Assembly: GCF_902459465.1 (NCBI RefSeq)
Contig: NC_047063.1
Span: 744,001-808,000 of the forward strand
Direction of reading: 5' to 3'
Length of the DNA stretch: 64,000 nucleotides
DNA from: Asterias rubens
Taxonomy: Eukaryota
In this document: piece after piece, positions 1 to 55,200 of the stretch
How the letters are laid out: each line of letters starts with the position of its first letter
How positions within the stretch are numbered: position 1 is the first letter of the stretch
Notes under the pieces: model-generated
Database searches by the model: none
The model's input: the letters and a program-made list of their open reading frames with translations, nothing else
What the model was told of the DNA's origin: nothing
Program-made: the position numbers and the translations under genes

Positions 1-205
1 GGGATTCGAACCCACGACCCTTGCAATTCTAGAGCAGTGTCTTACCAACTAGACTACCGAGATTGCCCGGCAGCTAGAGGCAGTTCGAATCCTATGTTTT
101 GGCAGCGGGTTCTATAGAGCGAACAACGGTAAAAACATTAAAAAAATATGAGCCCAAACGTTATTGTCAATTAAGAATAGTTCTGATGTTCAGTCACCTC
201 TTTAA

Positions 206-462
206 AGGCAGTGGACACTATTAGTAATTACTCAAAATAGTTATTTGATTTCGAGACCTCAGAATTAGATTTAGGTCTCGAAATCAAGCATCTAAAAGCA
301 CACAACTTCGTGTGACAAGAGTGTTTTTTCTTTCATTATTATCTCGCAACTTCAACAACCAATTGAGCTCAAATTTTCACAGGTTTGTTATTTTGTGCAT
401 ATGTTGAGATACACCAAGTGAGAACACTGGTCTTTGACAATTACCAATAGTGTCCAGTGTCT
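206..462 (+). mobile_element. Kolobok-like MITE (TTAA TSD, AG..CT termini), internally deleted copy
   Basis: ttaa|aggcagtggacact..agtgtccagtgtct|ttaa; same family as the copies at 36157, 46378, 52614 and 59920. Confidence 0.8.
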
Positions 463-577
463 TTAAAGATAAGGTCAGGGCAGACAGCTTTAAATTCACA
501 ATTTAAAATCTGTCATGCAACACTATTAATTAATACTTCACCCGCTATAGAAATCAATAACCGATAAATCTACTCAC

Positions 578-3481: not shown

Positions 3482-3519
<38 letters not shown>

Positions 3520-9500: not shown

Positions 9501-11744
9501 CCATTAGCCTACAATGCATGCAATGTGGCTGATGCAGAGAAACAACCGCACAGTTTTTAGACTTGGAATCAAGTCTATCATGTCATGTGCATTGATACTG
9601 CAGCCACAGTGCAACGGCTGTTACATGTTTCTGTTGCATCGATCAGCAGTATACAAATTAATAAAATAAAATAAAATATTCTTTTTTAGTATTTGTTTTT
9701 TAAATGTCAGTTCAAATTAACATTTAGGAAGTCAGCAGTGCAACTTATCCAAAATTTAGGTTTATAAGTGTCTCCCTGGGTATTAAACAACCTTTCATCT
9801 AATTAAAAAACATGAAACAGAATTTGTTGTGCCTGAAACGGAATTCATGTTTTTGTCAAACGGAATTAGCACTTTTCTGAAACGGAAAATCATTGGCCCT
9901 ACTAATACCTGATAGTTCCAGAACAGCAATGGATGATTTTACATTAATGCCTTTAGCATACTTGTATGGTTGGATGTCCCCTTCAATAGGATGACACAGA
10001 AATGGATCTGGACCAACCTAGACAAGAAAAATATCAATGATTAGTCTCAATCCATACAAATTTAGTTTTTACAACAGCTCTAACCAAAGGGAGCAAGACA
10101 ATACAAAAACAAACGCAACTGTATTATTCTGTCCAAGACAAAAATAACTATTAAAAATATCATGATTTATGTTTTCCTTGTGTTTGAGGAAACCAATAAT
10201 ATTTTTACAAAAGTAACATTGAAATATTATTGTTGTTTAGTTAATTAACTTAATTGAGAAATAACTAATACAATTAGGATATCTGTATATACTATACATA
10301 AAACAAATTGTCAATTTCCTGGTTTAGAGACATGTCAAACAATATAATAAAAACACATACTTGTTACAAGTGGACAATTGTATGATTATTTTCAAATTTA
10401 TCATTTAAAGTCGTCTTTCTGGTCTTACAAATGTTTTAGGAAAGAAAAATTTAAATTCTTTATAATATTGCTTTAATTAAACCTTCCTTTAGGCTTCACT
10501 GAAGGTATCTTTGATTTCCCTCATCTTAATTTTGCACATAACTTGAGACCCAAACTTAGTGGCCATATACTCACTGATAATGTATTACATCTGGATCCGA
10601 ACAAGTACTTCACTAAGTAGCCATCTCCATCTTCAATACATCCCCTGACTGCTTCCTTGAAGGCATCTAAAATATCACTCATCTTATACACACACAATGC
10701 TGACTGATCAATAGGTACATCACTAGTCCCATCAGCTCCTTCATTCTTAGCAAACACAGCATACAACACCATGTCCTCAGCATTCAAACCTAATGATACA
10801 GCAAGATCCTGACCTGCTGGGCCAATATGAGCAGCTTGTACCAAACTGTACACACTACCATCTGATCCTTGGCATTGTAGGGTGATTTCTGTGTAAGAGT
10901 CAAAGGATGGACTGGTCTGACAGACTCTGTTCATTTTAGAAACAAAGACATTGGAATCAAAATTCTCCTCTTGAGAAGTGATGAAGTATGTGAATCCTTC
11001 ATATGAGAAACCAGCTACATAATTGAACGGGAATGGGTTCTGTTTATAAGAATTATCAAATGCAGTAAACGAAGAATACCCTGTGCCTGATGGAGATATC
11101 AACAACACATCTGTACTATTAAGGATTCTTCTGCTGACTGGTGGGATTTGTGTATACCCAACCTCCTCATTGGAGTAAGTCACAGCTACATACAACCAGT
11201 CTCCTCCATCTGGCCCTGGTCCCATTGGTCCATCAGTTCCTGGTGCAATCAAACTCACAGTAGACAACTCTCCAAAACCAGCAACACTAGACTCTGGTTG
11301 AAACAACACACCAGTCAAATCATCTGGATTCCTGAACTGACACTTTCCTTCATTCTCACTTCCACATGTAATCAACCGATTCTGATTATCTAATATCAGG
11401 ATTTTATTGTAGTTGGTGAATATATCACATCTATCCTCTCCTAGTTCTTGACATGTACTAACATTCTGTAGCAGATTCAATGAACTATTTAGTCTGTATA
11501 AGTAGTTGACAGCTCCAACATACACAGCTCCATCAGGGCCAGATAGAGTGAAATGATTGAATTTAGCATTGTGGTTACCAGATGGATCATTGAGAGGTCT
11601 AGGAGGATGAGGATTACTGAATGAAGCAATGTGATAAGATGACAGATCTCCTTGCCATTCAGCTGATACAACACTACTTAATAATCCCAGCAGGATCAAA
11701 CATACAGCCAACCAGATGGTTACATGGCTCCTCTGGGCCTCCAT
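578..11744 (-). CDS. Inverted plexin-family paralog (one V exon + constant exons); 3' part continues beyond position 1
   Basis: Exons on the minus strand: 11744-10575 (V), 10017-9909 (A), 8539-8451, 7663-7535, 7347-7232, 6266-6134, 5223-5070, 4976-4877, 4720-4603, 4392-4258, 3214-3119, 2587-2479, 759-578. The constant exons match the plus-strand exons in length and phase (109, 89, 129, 116, 133, 154, 100, 118, 135, 96, 109, 182), with no stop seen. Completeness outside the window is unknown. Confidence 0.88.
851..1813. mobile_element. Non-autonomous TIR element, TAGGGC termini, 6-bp TSD (hAT-like)
   Basis: TIRs tagggccactgattttccg / cggaaaatcagtggcccta; flanking duplication caaata; homologous along its length to 8963-9901 in the opposite orientation. 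Confidence 0.85.
5335..5600 (-). mobile_element. Dispersed SINE-like repeat with tRNA-like A/B boxes
   Basis: The minus strand reads gtctagttggt..ctgctctagaatt..gtcgtgggttcgaatccc; related copies at 1-110, about 12690-12870 and about 19930-20090. Confidence 0.7.
8827..8928 (-). pseudogene. Decayed exon B homolog in the inverted paralog
   Basis: Starts VSPDGYLCHSV after a ttctag acceptor. The ASIAVLEIS end is in a different frame, the length is about 102 nt instead of 109, and the donor is degenerate (gttcaa). Confidence 0.7.
8963..9901. mobile_element. Second copy of the 6-bp-TSD TIR element, inserted between exons A and B of the inverted paralog
   Basis: Termini tagggcaaatgattttc / gaaaatcattggcccta; TSD ctaata at 8957-8962 and 9902-9907. 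Confidence 0.85.
10575..11744 (-). CDS. Variable-type Sema exon of the inverted paralog, intact
   Basis: 390 open codons from MEAQRSH; donor gtgagt at 10574; strong acceptor (tttgtttgcatttcaatgttacag) ending at 11813, about 70 nt upstream of the ATG. Confidence 0.9.
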
Positions 11745-33182: not shown

Positions 33183-34349
33183 ATGGAGGCCCAGAGGAGC
33201 CATATGACCATCTTGTTGGCTGTATGTTTGATCCTGCTGGGATTATTAAGTAGTGTTGTATCAGCTGAATGGCAAGGAGATCTGTCATCTTATCACATTG
33301 CTTCATTCAGTAATCCTCATCCTCCTAGACCTCTCAATGATCCATCTGGTAACCACAATGCTAAATTCAATCATTTCACTCTATCTGGCCCTGATGGAGC
33401 TGTGTATGTTGGAGCTGTCAACTACTTATACAGAGTGGATAGTTCATTGAATCTGCTACAGAATGTTAGTACATGTCAAGAACTAGGAGAGGATAGATGT
33501 GATACATTCACCAACTACAATAAAATCCTGATATTAGATAATCAGAATCGGTTGATTACATGTGGAAGTGAAAATGGAGGAAAATGTCAGTTCAGGAATC
33601 CAGATGATTTGACTGATGTGTTGTTTCAACCATACCCTAATGTTGCTGGTTTTGAAGAGTTGTCTACTGTAAGTTTGATTGCACCAGGAACTGATGGACC
33701 AATGGGACCAGGTCCAGATGGAGGAGATTGGTTGTATGTAGCTGTGACTTACTCCAATGAGGAGGTTGGGTATCCAGAAATCCCACCAGTCAGCAGAAGA
33801 GTCCTTAGTGCAGACGCATTGTTGGTATCCCCAGCAGGCACAGGGTTTTCTTCATTTACTGTGTTTGATACTTCCAATCTGAAGAATCCAATCCACATTA
33901 CATATGTAACTGGTTTCTCATATGATGGATTCACATACTTCATCACATTTCAAGAAGAGGATTTTTATTCCAATATCTTTGTTTCTAAAATGAACAGAGT
34001 CTGCCAGACCAGTCCAACATTTGACTCTTACACAGAAATCACCCTACAATGCCAAGGATCAGATGGTAGTGTGTACAAAATGGTACAAGCTGCTCATATT
34101 GGCCCAGCAGGTCAGGATCTTGCTGTATCATTAGGTTTGAATGCTGAGGACATGGTGTTGTATGCTGTGTTTGCTAAGAATGAAGGAGCTGATGGGACTA
34201 GTGATGTACCTATTGATCAGTCAGCATTGTGTGTGTATAAGATGAGTGATATTTTAGATGCCTTCAAGGAAGCAGTCAGGGGATGTATTCAAGATGGAGA
34301 TGACTACTCAGTGCAGCACTTGGAAGGATCCATCTGTCCATCATTATCA
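33183..34349 (+). CDS. Variable exon V1 (signal peptide + Sema domain N-terminal part), intact
   Basis: ATG at 33183 (MEAQRSHMTILLAVCLILLGLLSSVVSA, hydrophobic signal peptide). 389 open codons with plexin/Met-type Sema motifs (VYVGAVNYLYR, NYNKILILD, LITCGS, SKMNRVCQTSPTFDSYTEITLQC, SALCVYKM). Phase-0 donor gtgagt at 34350. Confidence 0.9.
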
Positions 34350-36899: not shown

Positions 36900-38072
36900 A
36901 TGGAGGCCCAGAGGAGCCACGTAACCATCTTGTTGGCCGTATGTTTGATCCTGCTGGGATTATTCTTAAGTAGCGTTGTATCAGCTGAATGGCAAGGAGC
37001 TGTGTCATCTTATCACATTGCTTCATTCAGTAATCCTCATCCTCCTAGACCTCTCAATGATCCATCAGGTAACCACAATGCTAAATTCAATCATTTCACT
37101 CTGTCTGGCCCTGATGGAGCTGTGTATGTTGGAGCTGTCAACTACTTATACAGACTGGATATGTCATTGAATCTACTACAGAATGTTAGTACATGTCAAG
37201 AACTAGGAGAGGATAAATGTGATATATTCACCAACTACAATAAAATCCTGATATTAGATAATCAATATCGGTTGATTACATGTGGAAGTGAGAATGGAGG
37301 AAAGTGTCAGTTCAGGAATCTAGATGATTTGACTGATGTGTTGTTTCAACCAGGGTCTAATATTGCTGGTTTTGGAGAGTTGTCTACTGTGAGTTTGATT
37401 GCACCAGGAACTGATGGACCAATGGGAGATGGTCCAGATGGAGGAGATTGGTTGTATGTAGCTGTGACTTATGCTACTGAAGAGGTTGGGTATACAGAAA
37501 TCCCGCCGGTCAGCAGAATAATCCTTAGTACAGATGGGTTGTTGATATCTCCATCGGGCACAGGGTATTCTTCATCTACTGCATTTGATGTTTCCTATAC
37601 TCGTGATCCATTCCAAATAACGTATGTCGTCGGTTTCTCATATGATGGATTCACATACTTCGTCACATTTCAAAAAGAGGATCTTGGTTCCAATGTCTTT
37701 GTTTCTAAAATGAACAGAGTCTGTCAGACCAGTCCAACATTTGACTCTTACACAGAAATCACCCTACAATGCCAAGGATCAGATGGTAGTGTGTACAGTT
37801 TGGTACAAACTGCTCATATTGGCCCAGCAGGTCAGGATCTTGCTGTATCATTAGGTTTGAATGCTGAGGACATGGTGTTGTATGCTGTGTTTGCTAAGAA
37901 TGAAGGAGCTGATGGGACTAGTGATGTACCTATTGATCAGTCGGCATTGTGTGTGTATAAGATGAGTGATATTTTAGATGCCTTCAAGGAAGCAGTCAGG
38001 GGATGTATTCAAGATGGAGATGGTCACGCAGTGCAGTACTTTCAAGGATCCTTCTGTCCATCCTTCCCGATG
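36900..38072 (+). CDS. Variable exon V2 (signal peptide + Sema), intact
   Basis: ATG at 36900, 391 open codons, same framework as V1, phase-0 donor gtgagt at 38073. Confidence 0.9.
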
Positions 38073-39355: not shown

Positions 39356-40516
39356 ATGGATGCCCAGAGGAGCCACGTAACCATCTTGTTGGCTGTATGT
39401 TTGATCCTGCTGGGATTATTAAGTTGTGTTGTATCAGCTGAATGGCAAGGAGATCTGTCATCTTATCACATTGCTTCATTCAGTAATCCTCATCCTCCTA
39501 GACCTCTCAATGATCCATCTGGTAACCACAATGCTAAATTCAATCATTTCACTCTATCTGGCCCTGATGGAGCTGCGTATGTTGGAGCTGTCAACTACTT
39601 ATACAGACTGGATAGTTCGTTGAATCTGCTACAGAATGTTAGTACATGTCAAGAACTAGGAGAGGGTAGATGTGATATATTCACCAACTACAATAAAATC
39701 CTGATATTAGATAATCAGAATCGGTTGATTACATGTGGAAGTGAGAATGAAGGAAAGTGTCAGTTCAGGAATCCAGATGATTTAACTGATGTGTTGTTTC
39801 AACCAGTGCCTAATGTTGCTGGTTTTGGAGAGTTGTCTACTGTGAGTTTGATTGCACCAGGAACTGATGGACCAATGGGAGATGGTCCAGTTGGAGGAGA
39901 CTGGTTGTATGTAGCTGTGACTTACTCCGATGAGGTTTGGTGTATCCCACCAGTCAGCAGAAGAATCCTTAGTACAGACGGATTGTTAATATCCCCAGCA
40001 CCATACCCAGGATCGTCTTCATCTGTTGCATTGGGGTTTTCTTATAATCGCAATCCATTCCCAATAACGTATGTAACTGGTTTCTCATATGATGGATTCA
40101 CATACTTCATCACTAATCAAATGGAGGATTTTGGTTCCAATGTCTTTGTTTCTAAAATAAACAGAGTCTGTCAGACCAGTCCAACATTTGACTCTTACAC
40201 AGAAATCACCCTACAATGCCAAGGATCAGATGGTAGTGTGTACAGTTTGGTACAAGCTGCTCATATTGGCCCAGCAGGTCAGGATCTTGCTGTATCATTA
40301 GGTTTGAATGCTGAAGACATGGTGTTGTATGCTGTGTTTGCTAAGAATGAAGGAGCTGATGGGACTAGTGATGTACCTATTGATCAGTCAGCATTGTGTG
40401 TGTATAAGATGAGTGATATATTAGATGCCTTCAAGGAAGCAGTCAGGGGATGTATTCAAGATGGAGATGACTACTCAGTGCAGTACTTGGAAGGATCCAT
40501 CTGTCCATCATTACCA
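39356..40516 (+). CDS. Variable exon V3 (signal peptide + Sema), intact
   Basis: ATG at 39356, 387 open codons, phase-0 donor gtgagt at 40517. Confidence 0.9.
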
Positions 40517-42705: not shown

Positions 42706-43850
42706 ATGGAGGCCCAGAGGAGCCACGTAACCATCTTGTTGGCTGAATGTTTGATTCTGCTGGGATTATTAAGTAGTGTTGTATCAGCTGAATGGCAAGG
42801 AGATCTGTCATCTTATCACATTGCTTCATTCAGTAATCCTCATCCTCCTAGACCTCTCAATGATCCATCTGGTAACCACAATGCTAAATTCAATCATTTC
42901 ACTCTATCTGGCCCTGATGGGGCTGTGTATGTTGGAGCTGTCAACTACTTATACTAATTGGATAGTTCATTGAATCTGCTACAGAATGTTAGTACATGTC
43001 AAGAACTTGGAGAGGATAGATGTTATATATTCACCAACTACTTATATAGATATTAGATAATCAGAATCGGTTGATTACATGTGGAAGTGAGAATGGAGGA
43101 AAGTGTCAGTTCAGGAATCCAGATGATTTGACTGATGTGTTGTTTCAACCAGGGCCTAATGTTGCTGGTTTTGGAGAGTTGTCTACTGTGAGTTTGATTG
43201 CACCAGGAACTGATGGACCAATGGGAGATGGTCCAGATGGAGGAGACTGGTTGTATGTAGCTGTGACTTATTCTGCTGAGGTTGGGTATAGAGCAATCCC
43301 ACCAATATCAAGGCGAATTCTTAGTGAAGGATCTTTATTGGCAGCACTTGATGGTAACACATTTTCATCAGTTGTTCCCTTTTCTACACCGATACAAATA
43401 TCGTATAGATCTGCTTTTTCGTTTGGCGGCTTCACATACTTCATCACTTCTCAAAAGGAGGATTTTGGTTCAAATTTCTTTGTTTCTAAAATGAACAGAG
43501 TATGCCAGACTAGTGAATATTTGGATTCTTACACAGAAATCACCCTACAATGCCAAGGATCAGATGGTAGTGTGTACAGTTTGGTACAAGCTGCTCATAT
43601 TGGCCCAGCAGGTCAGGATCTTGCTGTATCATTAGGTTTGAATGCTGAGGACATGGTGTTGTATGCTGTGCTTGCTAAGAATGAAGGAGCTGATGGGACT
43701 AGTGATGTACCTATTGATCAGTCAGCATTGTGTGTGTATAAGATGAGTGATATTTTAGATGCATTCAAGGAAGCAGTCAGGGGATGTATTCAAGATGGAG
43801 ATGACTACTCAGTGCAGTACTTGCAAGGATCCATCTGTCCAGCATTACCA
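42706..43850 (+). pseudogene. Variable exon V4, disabled
   Basis: Premature TAA at 42955-42957 (tac taa where other copies have tac aga). A net -4 nt change near 43041 (ttatata replaces aataaaatcct) shifts the frame. The rest is open to donor gtgagt at 43851. Confidence 0.88.
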
Positions 43851-44212: not shown

Positions 44213-45298
44213 TGTACGTACCGGTTACAAACCTATGTTCCGACACCCCTATGTTCCGACACGCCTATGTTCCGACACCCCTATGTTCCGACACCCCTAT
44301 GTTCTGACAACTCGGCCTATATTCCGACACCCCTATGTTCCGACACCCCTATATTCCGACATCCCTATATTCCGACACCCCTATGTTCCGACAACTGAAC
44401 TTATGTTCCGACACTCCTATGTTCCGACACCCCTAAATTCCGACACCCCTATGTTCAGACACCCCTATGTTCCGACACCCCTATGTTCCGACACCCCTAT
44501 GCTCCGACAAGTTATTTTCGCACATTATTACTCTGTTGATCAATAACAAAAACACATCTTGTAATACAGGTTCCCTGGCGAATTTTGCCCGGAATAGGTT
44601 TGAACATCATAAATTGAATTTTTACTGATTTTAAAAGTGATGGAGTCAAATTAAGATAATCGAATCACACATGATTCGGTTGCTTGTTGTGGTTATAAAC
44701 ATGAGTTAGGTCTATAGCTCCCCGAGTTAGCTGGCAATGAAATAATGGGTACTTTGCTATTGTTAGATGCGTGTCCGTGTTTTTAACATTTCATGAGCCT
44801 TCAATTTATTGCGCCGATGTGTACTTTCTTACATTTGCGCCCAACAACAACAAAAATAAATAAAAATAAACAAATAATAATAATAAAGTAAAAATAATAA
44901 TATTAATAATAATAACACATTAAGTCATACCACCCCCTCCATTACTCAGTCCTCTTCAAAATAAATCAAAGATGCTATTTTTTAATAGCAGAGTAACACT
45001 TCTCATATAAATTAGACTCCTCTGGGGGACTACATAGGTTACCGGTACATTTATGGACTAAATTGCAGTCGGGTGTAGTTTCTTAAAAAATGGCTCACAC
45101 AAAACGTTGTTGCAGGTTGTCGGAACATAGGGGTGTGTGAACATAGGGGTGTTTGGGTCGTTGGAATATAAGGGTGTCGGAACATAGGGGTGTCGGAATA
45201 TAGGTTGAGTTGTCGGAACATAGGAGGAACATAGGGGTGTCAGAAAATAGGGGTGTCGGAACATAGGGATGTCGGAATATAGAGCAGTCACCTACGTA
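44213..45298. mobile_element. Foldback-like insertion with inverted subterminal arrays of a 16-bp unit (CCTATGTTCCGACACC)
   Basis: Direct tandem array at about 44232-44510 and a reverse-complement array at about 45117-45281, with tacgta at both ends. It is absent from the homologous spacer positions after V1 (about 34710) and V3 (about 40887). Confidence 0.7.
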
Positions 45299-46377
45299 AC
45301 ATAAGTTGATTATCGCTAACAAAACTTAACGTAAAAGTTTCTCTATAGCCTTCAAAGCATTAATGCATTTATGCATATTGCTCTGTTTGTAGAAAGAACT
45401 ATTTGAAGCACATATCCATTTTTTTTTTTTTTTTAATAATTATTTAGTATACTTTGAAATGTAGAGACAATCATTTTTGGACGAACTGGCACTGTCGCCC
45501 TTGCCCGCCACACATGCGTCCATGTGAGACATGGACGCTACCTTTTGTACATCCCCGACAGGGATATTTGTAGGAACTCCATGTCCCATCTGACATTAAG
45601 CGTGAGAGTAAGTTTACATTTAGAGAGTAAAGAAAACAAAATGGCGCTCAACAGTGCACCTCAACTATCATTGTTAGGTTTACGTTGAATTATTTTTATT
45701 GATAAATAAACCACGACAATGCACCGTGGTTTTACATGAAACTTCGCAATTTCCTACAAGGAAGTATTTTTTTAAACATGGAAAGATTGAGGCAAAGTGG
45801 TGTCTATTGGAATATCGACAGGGAACAAAGAGTTCAAAAACTGTTCCATTTTTATGACAGGGGTGTTGTAGATCAAAAAGTGGGTACTAATTTTGCAGTG
45901 GTATATATAGTATTGAAAACGTATCAAAAGTTAAAACCATTTAAACGTTTCATGTTCTACGTTAACAATCAGTAATTGAGGAAGTACACAATATGATTTA
46001 CCGTGTCCCATAAGAGACACTTAATGCCCAATAAAGAACTTCCAGAAAAGTTCCAGTGTGCGGCGTGTTGTGCGTTTTTGATAATTTATTATTCAGTTTT
46101 GTAATGCACATAAACAGTATATGCTTGAACGCATGTTACAACAACGAACTTGAACAATAATTGCTCGGGTCGTCAACCTTTTCTGTCATTCTGGTACAAC
46201 ATACAACCTGATCGCAGACGAAAGACAAGTTGCAGGCCGCTCACAAACGGAAGGTGAAGGTTTTAAAGGTAAGAATTCCGTTTTGAAGCCTGAGCTGAGA
46301 GAGCTCATTATGACTCTAGTGATAATAAATTAGAAATCAATATAATTCTGGGGAAATACAAGTGAATCTTGTGTTAA

Positions 46378-46764
46378 AGGCAAAGGACCCTATTGGTAAT
46401 TACTCAAAATAATCATAAACCTTTCTTGATTACGAGTAATGGGGAGAAGTTGATAGTATAAAACATTGTGACAAACAGCTCCCTCTGAAGTGACGTAGTT
46501 TTCGAGAAAGAAGTAATTTTCCACGAATTTGATTTCGAGACCTCAGATTTATAGAACTTGAGGTATCGAAATCAAGCATCTGAAAGCCCACAACTTCGTG
46601 TGTGTGTGACAGGGGTGTTTTTTTCTTTCAGTAATATCTCGCAACTTCGACGACCGATTGAGCTCAAATTTCCCTCTGCTGGTCACTCAAAGTCCCTCGG
46701 GGGAATAGACGTACACTAGTTACCTCATTGCCAGTCAGTATGTGTTTAATAGTGTACAGTGTCT
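46378..46764 (+). mobile_element. Kolobok-like MITE upstream of V5 (same insertion site as the V2 copy)
   Basis: Same flanks and the same unusual 3' segment as 36157-36545, so it was duplicated with the spacer. Confidence 0.85.
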
Positions 46765-47097
46765 TTAAAGGCAATAGATCGGGCTTTAAAGTAATATGTA
46801 ACCCTCCTTACAAATATAATAACTATGGGGAAAGAAACTCGACTTTATCCTAAATAAGGCAAGACGAATAAGCAGCTTTTTAGTTTTAGTTTCTGGCGTT
46901 TTCTTGTGTGTTTTGGGGCAATGTAATAACTTATATTACACCGTTGTGTGTTTTTTCAGAAACTTGCGAGATATATCATGAGACAAAGCTGATGGCTGGT
47001 GTTACTGCATTCACCCATGTTTGTACACTGTGATTGAGTCTTCAGTCGTTAAAGTTTGTATCTCTGGCAGAAAGACACAAAGCGTACATTTAGTACT

Positions 47098-48150
47098 ATG
47101 GAAGCCCAGAGGAGCCACGTAACCATCTTGTTGGCCGTATGTTTGATCCTGCTGGGATTATTTAGAGGTGTTGTATCAGCTGAATGGCAAGGAGATCTGT
47201 CATCTTATCACATTGCGTCATTCAGTAATCCTCATCCTCCTAGACCTCTCAATGATCCATCTGGTAACCACAATGCTAAATTTAATCATTTCACTCTATC
47301 TGGCCCTGATGGGGCTGTGTATGTTGGAACTGTCAACTACTTATACAGACTGGATAGTTCATTGAATCTGCTACAGAATGTTAGTACATGTCAAGAACTA
47401 GGACAGGATAGATGTGATACATTCACCAACTACAATAAAATCCTGATATTAGATAATCAGAATCGGTTGATTACATGTAGAAGTGAGAATGTAGGAAAGT
47501 GTCAGTTCAGAAATCCAGATGATTTGACTGATGTGTTGTTTCGGCCAGGTGAAGGGACAAGCGGAACAGAACAGAACGTTGCTGGTTTTGGAGAGTTGTC
47601 TACTGTGAGTTTGATTGCACCAGGAACTGATGGATCAACTGGACCAGGGCCAGATGGAGGCGACTGGTTGTATGTAGCTGTGACTTACTCCAATGAGGTT
47701 GGGTATCGACATATCCCACCAGTCAGCAGAAGAGTCCTTAGTGCAGACGCATCGTTGATATCCCCATCAGGCACAGGGTATTCTCCATTTACTGCGTTTG
47801 ATATTTCTTATAAACAAAACGCAGTCCCATTTAACTATGTATCTGGTTTCTCATATGATGGATTCACATACTTCATCACTTCTCAGAAGGAGGATTCTGG
47901 TTCCAATGTCTTTGTTTCTAAAATGAACAGAGTCTGTCAGACCAGTCCAACATTTGCCTCTTACACAGAAATCACCCTTCAATGCCAAGGATCAGGTAGT
48001 GTGTACAGCTTGGTACAAGCTGCTCATATTGGCCCAGCAGGTCAGGATCTTGCTGTATCATTAGGTTTGAATGCTGAGGACATGGTGTTGTAATATGCTG
48101 TGTTTGCTAAGAATGAAGGAGCTGATGGGACTAGTGATGTACCTATTGAT
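47098..48150 (+). pseudogene. Variable exon V5, in-frame stop, 3' end lost by fusion to V6
   Basis: ATG at 47098. A 3-nt insertion gives ttg TAA tat gct (48091-48093) versus ttg tat gct in the other copies. After ..DVPID (48150) the sequence jumps to the RLDSSL position of another V copy. Confidence 0.85.
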
Positions 48151-49071
48151 AGACTGGATAGTTCATTAATCCTGATACAGAATGTAAGTACATGTCAAGA
48201 ACTAGGAGAGGATAGATGTGATATATTCACCAACTACAATAAAATCCTGATATTAGATAATCAGAATCGGTTGATTACATGTGGAAGTGAGAATGAAGGA
48301 AAGTGTCAGTTCAGGAATCCAGATGATTTGACTGATGTGTTGTTTCAACCAGGGTCTAATGTTGCTGGTTTTGGAGAGATGTCTACTGTATGTTTGATTG
48401 CACCAGGAACTGATGGACCAATGGGAGATGGTCCAGATGGAGGAGATTGGTTGTATGTAGCTGTGACTTATGCTACTGAAGAGGTTGGGTATACAGAAAT
48501 CCCGCCGGTCAGCAGAAGAATCCTTAGTACAGATGGGTTGTTGATATCTCCATCGGGCACAGGGTATTCTTCATCTACTGTATTTGATGTTTCCTATACT
48601 CGTGATCCATTCCAAATAACGTATGTCGTCGGTTTCTCATATGATGGATTCACATACTTCATCACATTTCAAAAAGAGGATATTGGTTCCAATGTCTTTG
48701 TTTCTAAAATGAACAGAGTCTGTCAGACCAGTCCAACATTTGACTGTCACACAGAAATCACCCTACAATGCCAAGGATCAGATGGTAGTGTGTACAGTTT
48801 GGTACAAGCTGCTCATATTGGCCCAGCAGGTCAGGATCTTGCTGTATCATTAGGTTTGAATGCTGAGGACATGGTGTTATATGCTGTGTTTGCTAAGAAT
48901 GAAGGAGCTGATGGGACTAGTGATGTACCTATTGATCAGTCAGCATTGTGTGTGTATAAGATGAGTGATATTTTAGATGCCTTCAAGGAAGCAGTCAGGG
49001 GATGTATTCAAGATGGAGATGACTACTCAGTGCAGTACTTGCAAGGATCCTTCTGTCCATCCTTCCTGATG
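48151..49071 (+). pseudogene. Variable exon V6, 5'-truncated V2-like copy fused to V5
   Basis: Lacks its own ATG and signal peptide. Variable islands are almost identical to V2 (YATEEVGYTEIPP..STDGLLISPSGTGYSSST.FDVSYTRDPFQITYVVGF). Donor gtgagt at 49072, and the downstream flank matches the V2 flank. Confidence 0.85.
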
Positions 49072-50269
49072 GTGAGTTTCGTTTGCTGGTTAAGTTTAAA
49101 CCGACATACATGTATGCAATGCAATGTGTATGTTTATGACCATTAATAATAATATAGATGCCATCAGGGATGATAATTTTTTCAACTTGAAAACCGATAC
49201 TTTAAGTCATGTTTAAATTTTGTTGTCAGTGATAAACATTGATTTTTGGTACAGGTATTTAGCTGTCGTAAAGACAAGCATTACAGTCCTTTGATTGAAT
49301 AATAGACTATGATTGTCTAATGAACGGACACGGTCGCCCTCATACCCTCCACACGCACGTGCACAAAGATCATGGGGTTTGCAAATTGCGTGACCCCTTA
49401 GATTAGTCATGAAGTCAAGACGGTAATTGTTAAGCGCGGTGTGTAGTTACAGCGGTGTAGCTACGGGGACGATACACACACCCTCGATCCCAGTATGTGT
49501 GTGTGAGCCATAGAGCTATATAATAGCTCTATGGTGTGAGCAGAGCTGCCTCGCGCTACCTACGACTGTTGCATGTGTAACATCGCACTGTGACCGTTGC
49601 ATGAAAGGCAGACAAATAGGCAGCGCCTAACGACTTGTCATCAAGTCTACCCCTGGATATGCAATGTGCCAAAATGTAGTTGTCAAAAGTTTGTTCAAAT
49701 AAAATATATAATTATTGTTGTTGCAATAAAAACGAACATTACGCCTGCTCTCATGCCTGACCTTTGCTTCCAGTTGGGTGAACAACATTGGGCCTACCTG
49801 TCATTGTGTGCATAGACTGTTTCTATTCCTTTCGTTAGTTTGTCTTTAAGGCCTACTAAGCATGGTACGCTATTTCCGTCTCGTATCTTTGTCTCGACTG
49901 CCGAGTATTCTGGCTCTCTTTCGTTGAAGTTTTTAGGCCGCCATCATCAACAAAGTGTTGTTTACGGTAACTGCATGAAGCCCGCCCATCACGAATTCTG
50001 ATTATGACTCAAATAACTCTGGAATCGCGGAAACAACACTATCCCACCAAAAGCCAGTTTAATCACTTTAGTTTCTGGCAGACATTTCGTGAATGTTGTG
50101 CTTTTATTTGTGCTTGTTTTGTATAATTTAAAGTTAACAAAGCTACTGCAAAGGAGTTCTGAAAAAGTTTGAGAGATCTTTCTCCAGCCTTGCGTTAGTC
50201 ACCATGTGCCTGAAACTTTGTACATAGCTTTGGAAGAAACAGAAGAGAACAAGTAACTTATGTTACACT

Positions 50270-51576
50270 ATGGATGCCCAGAGGAGCCACGTAACCATCT
50301 TGTTGGCTGTACGTTTGATTCTGCTGGGATTATTAAGTAGTGATGTATCAGCTGAATGGCAAGGAGATCTGTCATCTTATCACATTGCTTCATTCAGTAA
50401 TCCTCATCCTCCTAGACCTCTCAATGATCCATCTGGTAACCACAATGCTAAATTCAATCATTTCACTCTATCTGGCCCTGATGGAGCTGTGTATGTTGGA
50501 GCTGTCAACTACTTATACAGACTGGATAGTTCATTGAATCTGCTACAGAATGTTAGTACATGTCAAGAACTAGGAGAGGAATGTGATATATTCACCAACT
50601 ATAATAAAATCCTGATATTAGATAATCAGAATCGGTTGATTACATGTGGAAGTGAGAACGAAGGAAAGTGTCAGTTCAGGAATCTAGATGATTTGACTGG
50701 TGTGTTGTTTCAACCAGGGCCTAATGTTGCTGGTTTTGGAGAGTCGTCTGTGGGTTTGATTGCACCAGGAACTGATGGACCAGTCGGACCAGGGGCCGAT
50801 TTCACAAAGATCTAAGATTGATCGTTACTGCAAATCAATCGTAGTTGCTAAGTAAAATGTGATGTCACAATACAAATCACTATGGTGATACTGACAATTT
50901 GTCTTGCGATGAATTTGATTGCTTTGTGAAATCGGCCCCAGGGCCAGATGGAGGAGATTGGTTGTATGTAGCTGTGACTTACTCCAATGAGGTTGGGTAT
51001 CAAGCAATCCCACCAGTCAGCAGAAGAATCCTTAGTAAAGAAAGGTTGTTGATATCACCATCAGGCCTGGGGGTTTCTTCATTTATTGCATTTGATGTTT
51101 CCAATCTTAAGACTCCAATCCACATTACATATGTATCTGGTTTCTCATTTGATGGTTTCACATACTTCATCACTTCTCAAGAGGAGGATTTTGGTTCCAA
51201 TATCTTTGTTTCTAAAATGAACAGAGTCTGTCAGACCAGTCCATCCTTTGACTCTTACACAGAAATCACCCTACAATGCCAAGGATCAGATGGTAGTGTG
51301 TACAGTTTGGTACAAGCTGCTCATATTGGCCCAGCAGGTCAGGATCTTGCTGTATCATTAGGTTTGAATGCTGAGGACATGGTGTTATATGCTGTGTTTG
51401 CTAAGAATGAAGGAGCTGATGGGACTAGTGATGTACCTATTGATCAGTCAGCATTGTGTGTGTATAAGATGAGTGATGTTTTAGATGCCTTCAAGGAAGC
51501 AGTCAGGGGATGTATTCAAGAAGGAGATGGTCACTCAGTGCACTACTTGGAAGGGTCATTCTGTAGTAGATTTCCA
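50270..51576 (+). pseudogene. Variable exon V7 (closest to the constant region), disrupted by a MITE
   Basis: ATG at 50270. A 146-bp insertion plus 3-bp duplication at 50793-50941 introduces TAA (50813-50815) and a frameshift. The downstream half is open to donor gtaagt at 51577. Confidence 0.88.
50793..50938. mobile_element. PIF/Harbinger-like MITE inside V7
   Basis: TIRs gggccgatttcacaaag / ctttgtgaaatcggccc; 3-bp TSD CAG. Removing it restores ggaccagggccagat as in the other V copies. Confidence 0.88.
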
Positions 51577-52140
51577 GTAAGTGTATGGTTCACTACATTA
51601 CCGGACGATCCCAGGTTATTTTTGTGATATAGATGCCTTCAGGAAAGTCAAGGGAGGTTTTTCTTTAAAAGGCATTGTATACAAACAGATTTTAAAAACG
51701 TTAAGCTTAACATGTTTAAATTTTCAAATCAAACTGTTTTCTTTGGTTTTGGTTTATTTAATCATTCTTTCTACAAATACATGAAAACAGAATCATAGTA
51801 CTACTTATATATTCATTGTTTTCTATATGTAATTCGTTTATTCTTCAAGTAAAGAAGATAAACAAAATTTTAAACAACTCAACATTTGTTGTTTTCTATG
51901 TTCAAGTAAAACAATTATGTCTATTGTAGTGGTTTGTTGTGTTGCAAAAACATAGTAAAAAAAATATTTGTCATAATATTTGTCTGCTTTCTTTGAAATC
52001 ACTGGACTGGATGTCATATTATTTATAACAATTAACATTGTGTTAATGAACAAAATGAATTAGCCACCAGGTGCTTGTATGTAGAACGAAGTTAAAGTTG
52101 TGGATTGAGGCTAAAATATTTATCTTGTTTTATTGTCTAG

Positions 52141-52249
52141 ATTGGTCCAGATATGTTTTTGTGTCATGTTTTTGAAGGGGACACTATAATATACAGGAAT
52201 GCTAAAGGCATCAGTGTAACAGCATCCAATGCTGTACTGGAACTATCAG
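52141..52249 (+). CDS. Alternative constant exon A (109 nt)
   Basis: tctag acceptor; IGPDMFLCHVFEGDTIIYRNAKGISVTASNAVLELS+G; donor gtacat; phase 0 to phase 1. Confidence 0.8.
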
Positions 52250-55200
52250 GTACATCAAATGAGACATCAAATTTTCTGTTCTTCTATTTCTAGGTCAGTC
52301 CAGATATGTTTCTGTGTCATCATTTTGAAAATAGTAACCCAGTATACAAGTATGCTAAAGGAATTGATGTAACTTCATCAAATGCTGTACTGGAACTTTC
52401 AGGTATTAATAAGATACTGCATTACCTAAACAATCAAAATGTTCTGGTTTCAATTTAAAAGGGCAGTTAAACATCGACTCTCATCGCAATCAAATTTTTA
52501 ACAGTCTTAAACGCTTGTTTTATTTTGACTGCTCACTTTCCTCTGTGCAATTGTATTTGATAGTTAGTCTTCTTGATACAAATTATCAGTAAGTAAATTT
52601 TAAAAATATTTAAAGGCAGTGGACACTATTGGTAATTACCCAAACAAATTATTAGCATAAACCTTACTTGGTAACGAGAGGCTGAGAGTATAAAACATTG
52701 CTATAAACGGCTCCCTCTGAAGTAACGTAGTTTTCGAGAAAGAAGTAATTTTCCATGAATTTGATTTCAAGACCTCAGAATTAGATTTTGAGGTCTCGAA
52801 ATCAAGCATCTGAAAGCACACAACTTCATGTGACAAGGGTGGTATTTTTCTCTCATAGTTATCTCGCAACTCAATTGAGTTCAAACTATCACAGGTCCGT
52901 TGTTTTATGCATATGTGAGAAGACTGTTCTTTGACAATTACCCTTAGTGTCAAGTGTCTTTAAAGTGTTGTCCCCTGTGTGTTTGCAAGTTAAATGTTTT
53001 TTTGATAGTTTTAACTTGTTCTCTTTTTTACAGGACCATAAAGCTGTTGAGCTGATATTAAGTATCCTTTAAAAATATGGTTTTTTTTTTAATAAATTAA
53101 TGTACATTGTTTTAATATTGTCATTTCAAGACACTCTGATGTCCTCCATCATTACAACTACTGAGATGACCCACACTGTAGCTATCATTGGAACTTACTA
53201 CAGTGGGGAACTTTTAAAGGTAAGTATATTAATTTTGTTAATGTATATTTCTTTCATTTGTTTCTTGCATCAATAAGAGGATGCTTCCATCTTGGCGTTT
53301 GTGCAATTGGCAGCTTCCAGACCAAATCAAATAAACAAAACTGAAATTGTTATCATCCATCACCTTTAGAAGTAATTCATTATTCTTTCCTTGGAAAATG
53401 TGGGTAGGAACTACTAGGCGGGTAAATACATTTAACGCAATTCCAAGTATACATAGAAAGTTAACACAAACAAATAAAAACTTGGGTGGGTTTAAAATAT
53501 GAAACTTTAAAACACTGCTAATTATTGACTGTTGTGGGTCTCAAGACCGGTCTCCCCCTCGGACCTTCAGGTCTTGGTCTCGGATTTCGACTACAACACT
53601 GAACGTCTAACCACTCCTTATTTACAAGTGTTTGACCATAAATTATTATTGAAAATCAACCCGCTTACAACCACAAACTTTACCGTAAAAGAATATATTT
53701 TAAAAATTTACACACAAACATGCACACGCAGCAATGTTTCCGCCTTCTGGAAACAGTGATATGGAGCAAAAGGAAGGGACAGAAAACAGACAGAAGATGA
53801 AAACATTGAACAAAGGAAAGTGATTTCAAAAGGACAAAGGAAGGGTGGGGTATAAGGACTTTGCAAGTGTCAAACACAAACTTTACAATGATGACCTGTA
53901 ACTTTGGTATAACAAATGACAGCACAAATCTATGATTCAAGATTAAACATTATCCCAGGTTAACTATTCATATTATGCAAGATGGACCCATTGTATGCCT
54001 ATCTTTAAATTGTTGTGTTACAGGTTCACATCCAGAGCAAGACCTCAGCCAGACTGTATGAAAGAGTAGACCTTGATATTACTGGATCAGTTCTTAAAGA
54101 TGTCAAGATTAATGATACAACAAGAGAGATGTACATACTCACTGAACAAAAGGTACAATATATAAAGATGCAAGGACCATGCAAATGTTATTTTTTAATT
54201 TACCCCAAGCATATAATTTGACTTCATCTTTTTAAATATGTTTTGATTTGGACTGTATAGTTTCTGAAGATGCGGTTTGAGAATTGTGGTCAGTATACAA
54301 CGTGTGAGACGTGTATTGGTACGGATGCAGAGATGGATGGAGACCCATACTGTGGCTGGTGTACTCTGCAAAGACAGTAAGTATTGTATCTTGATTGGTT
54401 AACAATGCATGTTGAGAGTTATTACATATGCAGGGAGGGATGGAAACGTCAGCTGAATTAACAAATTTGGATCACCTCAAAAATAACTCTGTATGTATAT
54501 TATTAATACCTGTTTAGATGTACCCTGTATTCTGACTGCAAGATGCCTGATGTGTCTACGCGATGGTTAGCCTACAATACTGCACAGTGTATTGAGATAA
54601 CCAATGTGGATCCTTATAACAATCTACCAATCACTGTCACAGAACAACAGGTAAGAGTAACTGCTTACTGACTTTTGCATTTCCATACAGCTGGTTGGCA
54701 CAAACAATTGCTAAACACAGGTTCTGAGTATTGCTTAGCACAAATGGACGTTCCTCCAAGATGCTATTAAGATTACATAATTGTGACTTGATGGCTTGCT
54801 GTACTGAATGTCTCCTTCAGCCTCCCCTCTTTCTCTCAAATCCACCTGTATACCAATTGTATATTTACTAGGTTACTGTGAGTGTAGAGCAGTTACCAGA
54901 CTTACTGACCAACATGACATATGAGTGTTGGTTTGGATCCTACGTATCTCAAGCTACAAAGACTAATGAGGATCTTAGATGTGTCTCCCCACCTGATAAT
55001 AGAATACCACCAATTCAACAAGGAGGTAAGTCAAACGCTAAACTAGGGCCATTTGTTGCTATTGTTGTTAAAATGAAATAAACATACAACTTTTTATGAA
55101 TGTTCCATTTTCCAGATGATGCTGTTCAGGTTACACTGAGCATCCATTCCAGTGAAACACCAGTCAGTTTTGTGGATACAAGTTTCTACTTCTATGAATG

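What the first reader, a model, noticed from the sequence alone, without database searches (positions are those of the whole stretch)
47500..47900. V exons are mosaics: variable segments are shared patchwise, including with the inverted paralog
Seen: V5 has a V2-type leader (MYLWQKDTKRTFST..LLGLF), a V1-type RRVLSADA segment, a V4-like VGYR.IPP, and a FTAFD.SYKQN..PFNYV segment otherwise found only in the inverted copy (FTAFDNSYKQNPFPFNYV, about 36 kb away). V7 shares SNLK.PIHITYV with V1. V2 and V3 share STDGLLISP but then diverge. Inference: segmental gene conversion or unequal exchange shuffles loop cassettes using the identical framework as homology, so disabled copies could act as sequence donors, as in chicken Ig pseudo-V or trypanosome VSG systems (germline at least).
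Basis: partly seen in the sequence, partly recalled or inferred. Interest (0 to 1): 0.72.

Follow-up and report, generated by a model that had tools for sequence, protein, structure and literature searches.

The report
Patchwork plexin exons in starfish
In the starfish Asterias rubens, the repeated first coding exons of a plexin receptor gene are patchworks of older sequence blocks. They were most likely shuffled between copies in the germline, as happens in other repeated receptor genes, and nothing here shows shuffling in body cells.

Summary
The window is Asterias rubens LR699093.1:744001-808000. It holds seven tandem copies (V1-V7) of a ~1.17 kb exon encoding the signal peptide and the N-terminal Sema domain of a plexin. 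An eighth copy (Vinv) heads a divergently oriented paralogous gene.

Two are weak evidence. 'LLGLF' in V2 and V5 is not homologous at the nucleotide level. STDGLLISP is widespread and probably ancestral.

The mosaic pattern is real across the family:
- About half of informative site pairs are incompatible.
- Compatible sites are clustered along the exon (PHI z = -5 to -7 with 18 copies from two species). Sixty tree-like simulations never went below z = -2.4.
- Segment trees conflict: V5 joins V1 in one block and Vinv in the next.

V5 has a V2-like flank, an insertion shared with a paralog about 80 kb away, a V1-like tract, a Vinv-like cassette and an A. amurensis-like patch. For V5 alone, the statistical support is only moderate.

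The best explanation is germline ectopic gene conversion or unequal exchange among old cassettes. The variable block has dS 0.3-0.7; the framework has dS about 0.05.

The pseudo-V donor and somatic ideas are untested. This is a new member of a known kind. Sibling notes in this scan already cover the locus architecture.

The parts
10575..11744 (-). Vinv: intact first coding exon (signal peptide + N-terminal Sema) of a divergently oriented paralogous plexin gene (RefSeq model P0220, 1960 aa). It carries the SYKQNPFPFNYV cassette shared with V5.
   Evidence: downstream exons at 1-10 kb match the constant exons at 52-58 kb; N-terminus of P0220 is 100% identical to Vinv
33183..34349 (+). V1: intact V exon with a GTGAGT donor at 34350. 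It shares the RRVLSADA tract with V5 and the SNLK.PIHITYV cassette with V7 and Am1a.
36900..38072 (+). V2: intact V exon. Its 5' and 3' flanks are the closest relatives of the flanks of the V5/V6 composite.
   Evidence: (P0001 100%)
39356..40516 (+). V3: intact V exon. Its cassette (APYPGSSSSVALGFSYNRNPFPITYV) recurs, 98% identical, in a marine metagenome contig that has different neighbouring segments.
42706..43850 (+). V4: broken V exon (stop at codon 84, 4-nt deletion). It belongs to the deeply diverged 'type II' cassette lineage, which is intact in A. amurensis (Am3b/c, Am2a/b, Am3a).
47098..48150 (+). V5: truncated, disabled V exon. It has an in-frame TAA at 48091-48093 and no splice donor. 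This is the mosaic copy of the finding.
47550..47570 (+). V5 patch B: net 18-nt insertion (GEGTSGTEQ), homologous to a 27-nt insertion in the V exon of A. rubens plexin P0222, which lies outside the window on the opposite strand.
47713..47752 (+). V5 patch E: 40-nt tract identical to V1 (encodes IPPVSRRVLSADA).
   Evidence: segment tree (V1,V5) 86/92
47797..47841 (+). V5 patch F: the FD.SYKQN..PFNYV cassette. Nearest relative is Vinv (85%), against 65-75% to the other copies.
   Evidence: segment tree (Vinv,V5) 97/93, AU rejects V5+V1 with p = 0.016
47881..47907 (+). V5 patch G (SQKEDSGSN): identical at the protein level to A. amurensis Am3b/Am3c, and 97% at the nucleotide level over the segment.
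48150..48151 (+). Out-of-register junction. Exon position ~1053 of V5 is joined to exon position ~250 of V6, with at most 1-2 nt of microhomology.
48151..49071 (+). V6: 5'-truncated V exon (no leader), 94% identical to V2 including the downstream flank. Donor GTGAGT at 49072.
50270..51576 (+). V7: V exon disrupted by a 136-nt MITE-like insertion (50798-50933) and small deletions. It shares cassette F with V1/Am1a and segment D with V5/Am2c.
45574..47097 (+). V5 5' flank of the 'class A' type: 92-99% identical to the V2 flank and also related to the V4 flank.

Best explanation
The V exons are evolutionary mosaics made in the germline.

The setting (shown): the plexin family lies in a cluster of paralogous genes. 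Most genes carry one to several alternative first coding exons.

The proposed mechanism (inferred): the exon 'framework' has stayed nearly identical between copies and offers homology for ectopic pairing. Short-tract gene conversion, and occasional unequal or non-homologous exchange, then move blocks of the variable region from one copy to another. That region spans about 90 codons plus the exon end. Tract ends fall inside the variable block, so old, deeply diverged cassettes are recombined into new combinations.

V5 is the clearest product. It sits in a V2-like unit, judged by both flanks of the V5/V6 composite, but its exon body carries patches whose nearest relatives are four different copies: P0222, V1, Vinv and A. 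amurensis Am3b/c. It ends in an out-of-register junction with V6. That junction is best read as a recombination or repair event resolved non-homologously.

Shown: the incongruence, the clustering of compatible sites, the shared indel and the junction.
Inferred: the molecular mechanism (conversion versus crossover), its timing and its direction.
Not shown: any somatic activity or any donor role of the disabled copies.
For: Family-wide signal:
1. 42-53% of informative site pairs are incompatible and compatibility is spatially clustered. PHI p = 0.002-0.005 for the 8 window copies. z = -6 for 18 copies, z = -4.4 to -4.9 inside the variable block of type I copies, and z = -11 to -15 within A. amurensis alone.
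2. Sixty no-recombination simulations on the real tree with the real spatial rates gave z >= -2.4, against an observed -7.4 and -5.4.
3. Segment trees give (V1,V5) 86/92 in block S2 and (Vinv,V5) 97/93* in S3. The starred S1 clade {V2,V3,V4,Am1a,Am3b,Am3c} is incompatible with the 100/100 type I / type II split of S2 and S3.
4. AU tests reject V5+V1 in S3 (p = 0.016) and V5+V2+V6 in S1-S3 (p = 0.003-0.044), although the V5 flank is V2-like.
5. Multi-nucleotide cassette alleles occur in all four combinations. For segments D x F these are Am1a, Am3a, V7 and V5/Am2c.
6. A shared insertion groups V5 with P0222, while P0222's cassettes D-F group with V2/V6.
7. Significant shared tracts lie inside the variable block: Am1a-Am2c (global p ~0.01), Am1c-Am2c, and V7-Am1b.

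Age of the cassettes:
8. The variable block has dS 0.3-0.7 and the framework dS 0.04-0.07 in the same exons.
9. Exons of old paralogs are 96-98.7% identical while their introns are unalignable.
10. Orthologous cassettes differ by only 2-9% between species (V1-Am1a 95%, V3-X5 98%). The block is therefore old rather than hypermutating.

Assembly check:
11. A short-read unitig matches 47678-47872 exactly, and an independent A. amurensis assembly shows the same kind of mosaics.
Against: - No rise of GC3 in the framework relative to the variable block (0.30-0.35 vs 0.32). That rise is the signature used for protocadherin conversion (PMC1852091).
- No species-diagnostic sites, and equal within- and between-species framework distances. 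There is no detectable homogenisation since the A. rubens / A. amurensis split.
- For V5 taken alone the tests are only moderately significant: triplet tests do not survive Bonferroni correction, the V1-V5 run test gives p = 0.14 once gap columns are counted, and AU p = 0.10 for V5+Vinv in S2.
- Part of the listed sharing is ancestral retention (STDGLLISP) or coincidence (LLGLF).
Confidence: 0.85

Rival explanations
1. There was no exchange. The copies diverged on a single duplication tree. The patchwise similarities are retained ancestral states plus homoplasy at fast-evolving loop codons.
For: Some listed motifs are indeed ancestral or coincidental: STDGLLISP is widespread and LLGLF is non-homologous. 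The overall level of incompatibility (0.42) can be reproduced by high site rates alone (0.45 in simulations). Single-triplet tests for V5 do not survive multiple-test correction.
Against: The spatial clustering of compatible sites is not reproduced by any of 60 tree-like simulations. Starred splits in adjacent blocks are mutually incompatible. Shared patches include synonymous positions, a 40-nt identical tract and a homologous multi-codon insertion. The V5 flank and exon body have different nearest relatives.
Confidence: 0.07
2. Assembly artefact: V5 and the V5|V6 junction are chimeras produced by mis-joining or mis-polishing near-identical repeats.
For: The copies share 95-100% identical framework stretches. 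Logan unitigs of the best DNA run hold only half of the sampled words. No listed contig is shown to bridge 48150|48151.
Against: A 195-nt short-read unitig matches 47678-47872 with 0 differences and spans both the V1-like and the Vinv-like patches. Contigs of another individual (spacers 1-3% different) cover the V5 block, with only one listed difference. The same kind of mosaics occurs in the independently assembled A. amurensis genome. V5 has many private changes not found in any other copy.
Confidence: 0.03
3. Somatic diversification: disabled V copies serve as donors that are copied into an expressed V exon in body cells, as with chicken Ig pseudo-V genes or trypanosome VSG mosaics.
For: Half of the A. 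rubens copies are disabled yet retain framework identity. A plexin-A4-like protein is reported among A. rubens coelomocyte surface proteins, although the paper's protein was not matched to this locus (PMC13409769).
Against: There is no evidence of any kind for somatic variants. The mosaics are in the germline assembly, recur in other individuals and species, and their cassettes are millions of years old. Several V exons are intact with their own ATG and donor, and two A. amurensis genes have annotated isoforms with alternative V exons. This is a different way of using an array.
Confidence: 0.02
4. Convergent selection: the same loop motifs were selected repeatedly in different copies because they bind the same ligands.
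For: The exon-end segment has dN/dS of about 1.
Against: Variable-block dN/dS is 0.4-0.6 with strongly elevated dS. Shared patches are shared at the nucleotide level, including synonymous sites and indels.
Confidence: 0.03

Closest known systems
Clustered protocadherin genes (variable first exons with regional gene conversion; Noonan et al. 2004 as cited in PMC1852091; fugu, anole and Xenopus clusters in PMC1852091, PMC2764143, PMC4978886)
   Same: - A tandem array of large paralogous 5' exons, each with its own start codon, signal peptide and splice donor, lies upstream of shared constant exons.
- Part of each exon is kept nearly identical among paralogs while another part stays diverse.
- There is evidence of exchange between paralogs.
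- In A. amurensis, isoforms of one gene start with different V exons.
   Different: - The V exon here encodes only about two thirds of one domain (the Sema propeller), not a whole ectodomain plus transmembrane segment.
- Arrays are short (1-7 exons) and the whole gene is itself duplicated several times.
- No GC3 rise and no lineage-specific homogenisation since the species split.
- Promoter choice and splicing are not shown in A. rubens.
Patchwork evolution by interlocus gene conversion in MHC class I/II, KIR and similar receptor families (own knowledge)
   Same: Short tracts move old sequence motifs between paralogs. The result is a combinatorial patchwork with motifs shared across species and conflicting segment trees.
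   Different: Here the units are alternative exons and paralogous genes of a plexin. Allelic polymorphism and selection on the patches are not measured.
Sea urchin Sp185/333 (SpTransformer) gene family (PMC3342357)
   Same: It is an echinoderm gene family whose members are mosaics of shared sequence 'elements'. Recombination or gene conversion among clustered members is discussed as a source of diversity.
   Different: It is an unrelated protein family with small two-exon genes. The mosaicism there is defined by presence or absence of elements, and immune function has been shown. None of that is tested here.
Chicken Ig pseudo-V gene conversion and trypanosome VSG mosaic formation
   Same: Arrays contain disabled copies that share framework homology with functional copies. 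Mosaic products are made of segments from several copies.
   Different: Those systems act somatically or clonally on a single expressed acceptor and need dedicated initiation (AID, or breaks at the expression site). Here the mosaics are germline, old and shared between individuals and species. No acceptor/donor asymmetry is shown.
Echinoderm plexin-B / Met-LP expansion (Junqueira Alves et al. 2019, PMC6374515)
   Same: The same gene family. Expansion of plexins and of plexin-ectodomain tyrosine kinases in Acanthaster is described there. The nearest Patiria relatives found here carry kinase domains.
   Different: In the passages read, that paper counts genes and does not mention arrays of alternative Sema exons, hypervariable blocks or mosaicism.

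Membership tests
Plexin family | N-terminal Sema domain followed by PSI/TIG repeats and a cytoplasmic plexin GAP domain | tested here: met
   Pfam Sema hit on the V6 ORF. Best solved relatives are Drosophila PlexA (E = 5e-42) and mouse/human plexin-A1/2/4. Full-length models over these loci carry Sema, PSI, TIG_plexin, Plexin_cytopl and Plexin_RBD.
Variable-first-exon receptor cluster (protocadherin / UGT1A type) | Tandem paralogous 5' exons upstream of one set of constant exons | tested here: met
   Seven V copies lie at 33-51.6 kb on the + strand and the constant exons start at about 52.1 kb.
Variable-first-exon receptor cluster (protocadherin / UGT1A type) | Each variable exon has its own start codon, signal peptide and 5' splice site | tested here: met
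   Met for V1, V2, V3 and Vinv, which have an ATG, a leader and a GTGAGT donor, and for 9 of 9 A. amurensis exons. V4-V7 are broken.
Variable-first-exon receptor cluster (protocadherin / UGT1A type) | Alternative splicing of each variable exon to the first constant exon | tested here: inconclusive
   A. amurensis RefSeq isoforms of one gene begin with Am1a (X1/X2) or Am1c (X3). Those of another gene begin with Am3a or Am3b. In A. rubens, V1-V4 are annotated as stand-alone ORFs and the full-length model starts at V5. The RNA reads laid here showed no V-to-constant joints among those listed.
Variable-first-exon receptor cluster (protocadherin / UGT1A type) | A promoter in front of each variable exon | not tested
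   Only two conserved classes of upstream flank were seen.
Germline interlocus gene conversion in a multigene family | Phylogenetic incongruence along the sequence, with clustering of compatible sites | tested here: met
   PHI tests, simulation control, segment trees and AU tests.
Germline interlocus gene conversion in a multigene family | Paralogous exons far more alike than their flanking introns or than their own variable parts | tested here: met
   Exons are 96-98.7% identical while introns are unalignable between the two window genes. Framework dS is 0.04-0.07 against 0.3-0.7 in the variable block.
Germline interlocus gene conversion in a multigene family | Raised GC3 in converted regions (GC-biased conversion) | tested here: not met
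   GC3 is 0.30 and 0.35 in the framework and 0.32 in the variable block.
Germline interlocus gene conversion in a multigene family | Concerted evolution: paralogs more alike within a species than between species | tested here: not met
   Framework distance is 0.038 and 0.027 within species and 0.033 between. There are 0 near-diagnostic sites in 1365 columns.
Somatic gene-conversion diversification with pseudogene donors (chicken Ig, VSG) | Sequence of the expressed copy differs between cells of one individual | not testable with these tools
   This needs UMI-controlled amplicon or single-cell data. The single reads call allowed gave only contigs and low RNA depth.
Somatic gene-conversion diversification with pseudogene donors (chicken Ig, VSG) | One expressed acceptor with silent donors, and one-way transfer from donors | tested here: inconclusive
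   Several intact V exons have their own ATG and donor. Direction of transfer could not be inferred for any tract.

The most novel reading that the evidence does not exclude
The sea-star plexin cluster may be a diversified recognition-receptor system of the protocadherin/Dscam kind. Alternative Sema-domain exons would give one receptor gene several ligand-binding faces. Germline shuffling of old loop cassettes among functional and disabled exons, and across paralogous genes on both strands, would be the process that renews the repertoire under selection. The disabled exons would then be a reservoir of cassettes rather than mere debris.
Probability: 0.15. Interest if true: 0.8.

Novelty: new member of a known kind. 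Interest (0 to 1): 0.5.

Why it matters
Plexins are normally conserved, single-ectodomain receptors for semaphorins. Here the part of the Sema domain encoded by the first coding exon exists in many versions per genome. Those versions are built from a limited set of old cassettes recombined in different ways in two Asterias species.

If the exons are used alternatively, as the A. amurensis isoform models suggest, this would be a third solution to receptor diversification after Dscam and the protocadherins. It would sit in a deuterostome invertebrate, with gene conversion as the source of new combinations.

The result also has practical value:
- Gene trees of these plexins built from whole exons are unreliable.
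- The A. rubens annotation of this locus (a 2233-aa model starting at the disabled V5, and stand-alone 'plexin-like' ORFs) needs revision.

Tried and rejected
1. Unfiltered 3SEQ-type triplet scan. It was dominated by V4, whose private changes cluster in the variable block. I replaced it with a scan restricted to parsimony-informative sites.
2. Sawyer-type run test on gap-free columns. The apparently significant V1-V5 run was inflated because mismatching columns that hold gaps in other copies had been dropped. With gaps as a state, p = 0.14. The earlier value is withdrawn.
3. Framework-wide run tests. These are confounded by rate heterogeneity and were not used.
4. GC3 test for biased conversion: negative.
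5. Test for species-specific homogenisation: negative.
6. RNA evidence for V usage from read laying: inconclusive. Depth was low, reads cross-map between V2 and V6, and the joints table was filled by a high-copy repeat.
7. AlphaFold model of P0220:1-565 from a 34-row alignment: mean pLDDT 52.7, with residues 25-230 below 50. It was too poor to map the cassettes onto loops, so the 'loop' part of the claim was not tested.
8. The 2233-aa A. rubens model that starts at V5 could not be retrieved as a sequence. How it bypasses the TAA is unknown.
9. DNA of metagenome protein P0017 was not available. It combines a V1-type 3' part with a Vinv/V5-type cassette.
10. Direction of transfer for the V1-V5 tract: neither A. 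amurensis nor the other copies carry RRVLSADA, so it could not be polarised.
Full report
**What is there.** The window is Asterias rubens chromosome record LR699093.1, positions 744001-808000. The V2 exon is 100% identical to RefSeq 'plexin-A2-like [Asterias rubens]', and its ATG at window 36900 equals record 780900. A tblastn search with the ORF under the finding shows eight copies of a ~1.17 kb coding unit. The unit encodes a signal peptide plus the N-terminal two thirds of a plexin Sema domain. Pfam gives a Sema hit, and the best solved relatives are Drosophila PlexA (E = 5e-42) and plexin-A1/2/4.

| Copy | Window coordinates | State |
|---|---|---|
| Vinv | 11744-10575, minus strand | intact, ATG to GTGAGT donor |
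| V1 | 33183-34349 | intact |
| V2 | 36900-38072 | intact |
| V3 | 39356-40516 | intact |
| V4 | 42706-43850 | stop at codon 84 and a 4-nt deletion |
| V5 | 47098-48150 | in-frame TAA at 48091, no donor, fused at 48150\|48151 to V6 |
| V6 | 48151-49071 | starts at exon position ~250 |
| V7 | 50270-51576 | interrupted by a 136-nt insertion |

Vinv is the first coding exon of a divergently oriented paralogous plexin gene. Its later exons (1-10 kb, minus strand) match the constant exons at 52-58 kb, and RefSeq model P0220 joins Vinv to the next exon.

**Check of the observation.** At the nucleotide level three of them need qualification.
- The 'F' in LLGLF arises from an inserted TTC codon in V2 and from a TTA>TTT change in V5, so it is not a shared patch. 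The V5 5' flank, however, really is V2-like: 92-99% over 1.1 kb.
- STDGLLISP is also found in A. amurensis Am1a, Am1c and Am2c and in a metagenome contig. It is best read as the ancestral state.
- SNLK.PIHITYV is the cassette type of the orthologous A. amurensis array (Am1a/b/c). V1-V7 sharing may therefore be by descent.

The other claims hold. V5 shares a 40-nt identical tract with V1 (47713-47752, RRVLSADA). It also shares the SYKQN..PFNYV cassette (47797-47841) with the inverted copy only: 85% identity, against 65-75% to the rest.

**Is it more than chance?** Among the eight window copies there are 98 parsimony-informative columns. They group V5 with V1, with Vinv, with V4 and with V2 in different places, and V7 with V1, V4 and Vinv. 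About half of all pairs of informative sites are incompatible, and compatible sites are clustered (PHI p = 0.002-0.005).

To gain power I fetched nine intact V exons from three arrays of the A. amurensis cluster (CP134953.1, 29.17-29.30 Mb; L001-L003). I also fetched one exon from another asteroid assembly and one from a marine metagenome.
- With 18 copies, PHI gives z = -6.
- Inside the variable block of the 'type I' copies, z = -4.4 to -4.9.
- Within A. amurensis alone, z = -11 to -15. No permutation was as extreme in any of these.
- As a control I simulated 60 data sets without recombination on the ML tree, keeping the real spatial pattern of site rates. The overall incompatibility was reproduced (0.45 vs 0.42) but the clustering was not. 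Simulated z stayed at or above -2.4, against an observed -7.4 and -5.4, and 3-5% of simulations reached p <= 0.05.

**Segment trees.**
- In block S2 (all.aln columns 733-880), V5 joins V1 (86/92). In S3 (881-990), it joins Vinv (97/93, starred).
- A starred clade {V2,V3,V4,Am1a,Am3b,Am3c} in S1 is incompatible with the 100/100 split that separates a deeply diverged 'type II' lineage (V4, Am2a, Am2b, Am3a, Am3b, Am3c) in S2 and S3.
- On the eight-copy alignment, AU tests reject V5+V1 in S3 (p = 0.016) and V5+V2+V6 in S1, S2 and S3 (p = 0.003, 0.044, 0.035). V5+Vinv in S2 is 10.9 lnL worse but not formally rejected (p = 0.10).
- Cassette alleles defined by >=88% nucleotide identity occur in all four combinations. 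For segments D and F these are Am1a (a,a), Am3a (a,b), V7 (b,a) and V5/Am2c (b,other).

Triplet tests for V5 reach only nominal p of about 0.001. A run test that first looked significant for V1-V5 was an artefact of dropped gap columns, and I withdraw it.

- The V5 'private' 18-nt insertion (about 47550-47570, GEGTSGTEQ) is homologous to a 27-nt insertion in the V exon of another A. rubens plexin, P0222. That exon lies at L008 8013-9203, about 80 kb to the left of the window on the other strand.
- P0222's cassettes D-F are V2/V6-like and its exon end is Vinv/Am3b-like.
- V5's SQKEDSGSN segment matches A. amurensis Am3b/c (97%).
- A metagenome protein (P0017) combines a V1-type 3' part (FQEEDFYSNIF, VYKMVQ) with a Vinv/V5-type cassette.

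So V5 has at least five segments with five different nearest relatives.

**The V5|V6 junction.** Both flanks of the V5/V6 composite are colinear with the V2 unit. The upstream flank is 92-99% identical, and V6 plus the downstream spacer is 94% identical. Between them, exon positions 250-1053 are present twice, and the two versions are only 86.5% identical. The second version (V6) is V2-like; the first (the V5 body) is not.

The left transition is in register somewhere in the uninformative framework. The right one (48150|48151) is out of register, with at most 1-2 nt of microhomology. I read this as one of two things:
- a recombination or repair event that began by homologous pairing with another V exon and was resolved non-homologously; or
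- an intra-exon duplication whose first copy was later overwritten.

Either way, sequence from other copies entered a V2-like unit. This step is inference.

**Age and dynamics.**
- In the same exons, synonymous divergence is 0.04-0.07 in the framework and 0.3-0.7 in the variable block. dN/dS is 0.4-0.6 in the block and about 1 at the exon end.
- Orthologous cassettes differ little between species: V1-Am1a 95%, V7-Am1a 91%, V3-X5 98%. The block is therefore old rather than hypermutating. This agrees with the earlier follow-up on this window (s1-180004).
- Between the two window genes, exons are 90-98.7% identical while introns do not align. Orthologous introns of A. rubens and A. amurensis are about 89-91% identical.
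- This pattern fits exon-restricted homogenisation that spares the variable block.

Two expectations of ongoing conversion fail. GC3 is not raised in the framework. There is no species-specific homogenisation: within- and between-species distances are equal and there are 0 diagnostic sites. Exchange is therefore slow on the time scale of the species split. A few recent events are visible: V2/V6, Am3b/Am3c and the 40-nt V1-V5 tract.

**Assembly and expression.**
- A 195-nt unitig from the best DNA run matches 47678-47872 without a difference and spans both the V1-like and the Vinv-like patches.
- Contigs of another individual, whose spacers differ by 1-3%, cover the V5 block.
- No listed contig is shown to bridge 48150|48151.
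- RNA evidence was inconclusive.
- In the A. rubens annotation, V1-V4 are stand-alone ORFs. A 2233-aa full-length model starts at the V5 ATG. It must skip the TAA and is about 190 aa longer than its A. amurensis orthologs, so I consider it doubtful.
- In A. amurensis, isoforms of the orthologous gene begin with Am1a (X1/X2) or Am1c (X3). Isoforms of a second gene begin with Am3a or Am3b. This is the only support found here for alternative use of V exons.

**Comparison with known systems.**
- The architecture and the pattern of a homogenised part plus a diverse part resemble clustered protocadherins, for which regional gene conversion among variable exons is documented (PMC1852091 and the papers it cites).
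- The patchwork of old motifs resembles MHC/KIR-type interlocus conversion (own knowledge) and the element mosaics of sea-urchin Sp185/333 (PMC3342357).
- Expansion of plexins and Met-LP kinases in echinoderms is known (PMC6374515). The nearest Patiria relatives found here indeed carry kinase domains.
- Four full-text searches returned no paper whose title or abstract describes arrays of alternative Sema exons or their mosaicism.
- The chicken pseudo-V and VSG analogy concerns somatic or clonal mechanisms, for which there is no evidence here.

**Verdict.** The reading 'segmental exchange shuffles cassettes' is supported for germline evolution. The 'disabled copies as donors' and somatic readings remain untested. 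The phenomenon is a new member of a well-known kind, set in an unusual and apparently undescribed locus that sibling notes of this scan already cover (s1-179997, s1-180004).

Noticed in passing
window 50794-50937: The insertion that breaks V7 is a MITE-like element (50798-50933). It has perfect 12-nt terminal inverted repeats (GATTTCACAAAG / CTTTGTGAAATC) and a duplicated GGCC on both sides. Its unitig depth is about 4e5 in the DNA run, so it is a very high-copy family.
   Followed up: partly
window 49318-49689: There is a second very high-copy interspersed repeat in the V6-V7 spacer (unitig depth about 1e5). It has many internal length variants in the reads.
   Followed up: no
window 47098 onward (L006 20199, L007 14393): The RefSeq/GenBank full-length plexin model of this gene (2233 aa) starts at the ATG of the disabled V5 exon. 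It is about 190 aa longer than its A. amurensis orthologs and must skip the TAA at 48091. V1, V3 (read-through), V2 (392 aa) and V4 (294 aa) are annotated as separate short 'plexin-like' genes.
   Followed up: partly
L001 7674-13597; L003 4104-11140 (A. amurensis CP134953.1): RefSeq isoforms of one A. amurensis plexin gene start with different V exons (X1/X2 = Am1a, X3 = Am1c). A second gene uses Am3a or Am3b. All nine A. amurensis V exons examined are intact, against four of eight in A. rubens.
   Followed up: partly
window 1-10574 (minus) versus 51577-60000 (plus): Exons of the two paralogous plexin genes are 90-98.7% identical at the nucleotide level while the introns between them do not align at all. 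The first constant exon (52093-52411 vs 10064-9900) is an exception at 78-79%.
   Followed up: partly
V-exon framework, all copies (all.aln columns 91-690, 1001-1233): Framework divergence is the same within A. rubens, within A. amurensis and between them (0.027-0.038), with no species-diagnostic site in 1365 columns. Orthologous introns are about 9-11% different. Neither simple concerted evolution nor simple divergence explains this.
   Followed up: partly
L008 8013-9203 (A. rubens LR699093.1, about 0.68 Mb, opposite strand): Another plexin gene of the cluster (P0222, 1972 aa) has a single V exon that is itself a mosaic. Its insertion is like V5's, its cassettes are like V2/V6 and its exon end is like Vinv/Am3b. 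A further 1953-aa plexin gene lies next to it.
   Followed up: partly
window ~26900-31232, minus strand (L006 1-4333): An Arf/Ras-family small GTPase gene (187-aa product) lies between the two divergently oriented plexin genes.
   Followed up: no
window 44230-45282: A block of ~90-bp repeats in both orientations sits in the V4-V5 spacer. There are many mutual blastn hits at 76-85%.
   Followed up: no
Patiria miniata proteins P0035, P0176-P0192: The closest Patiria relatives of this V exon (50-56% identity) are about 18 genes on one chromosome that combine a plexin ectodomain with a tyrosine-kinase domain (Met-LP type). Their N-terminal regions are 74-92% identical to each other. Several short Sema-only models lie on the same chromosome.
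   Followed up: no
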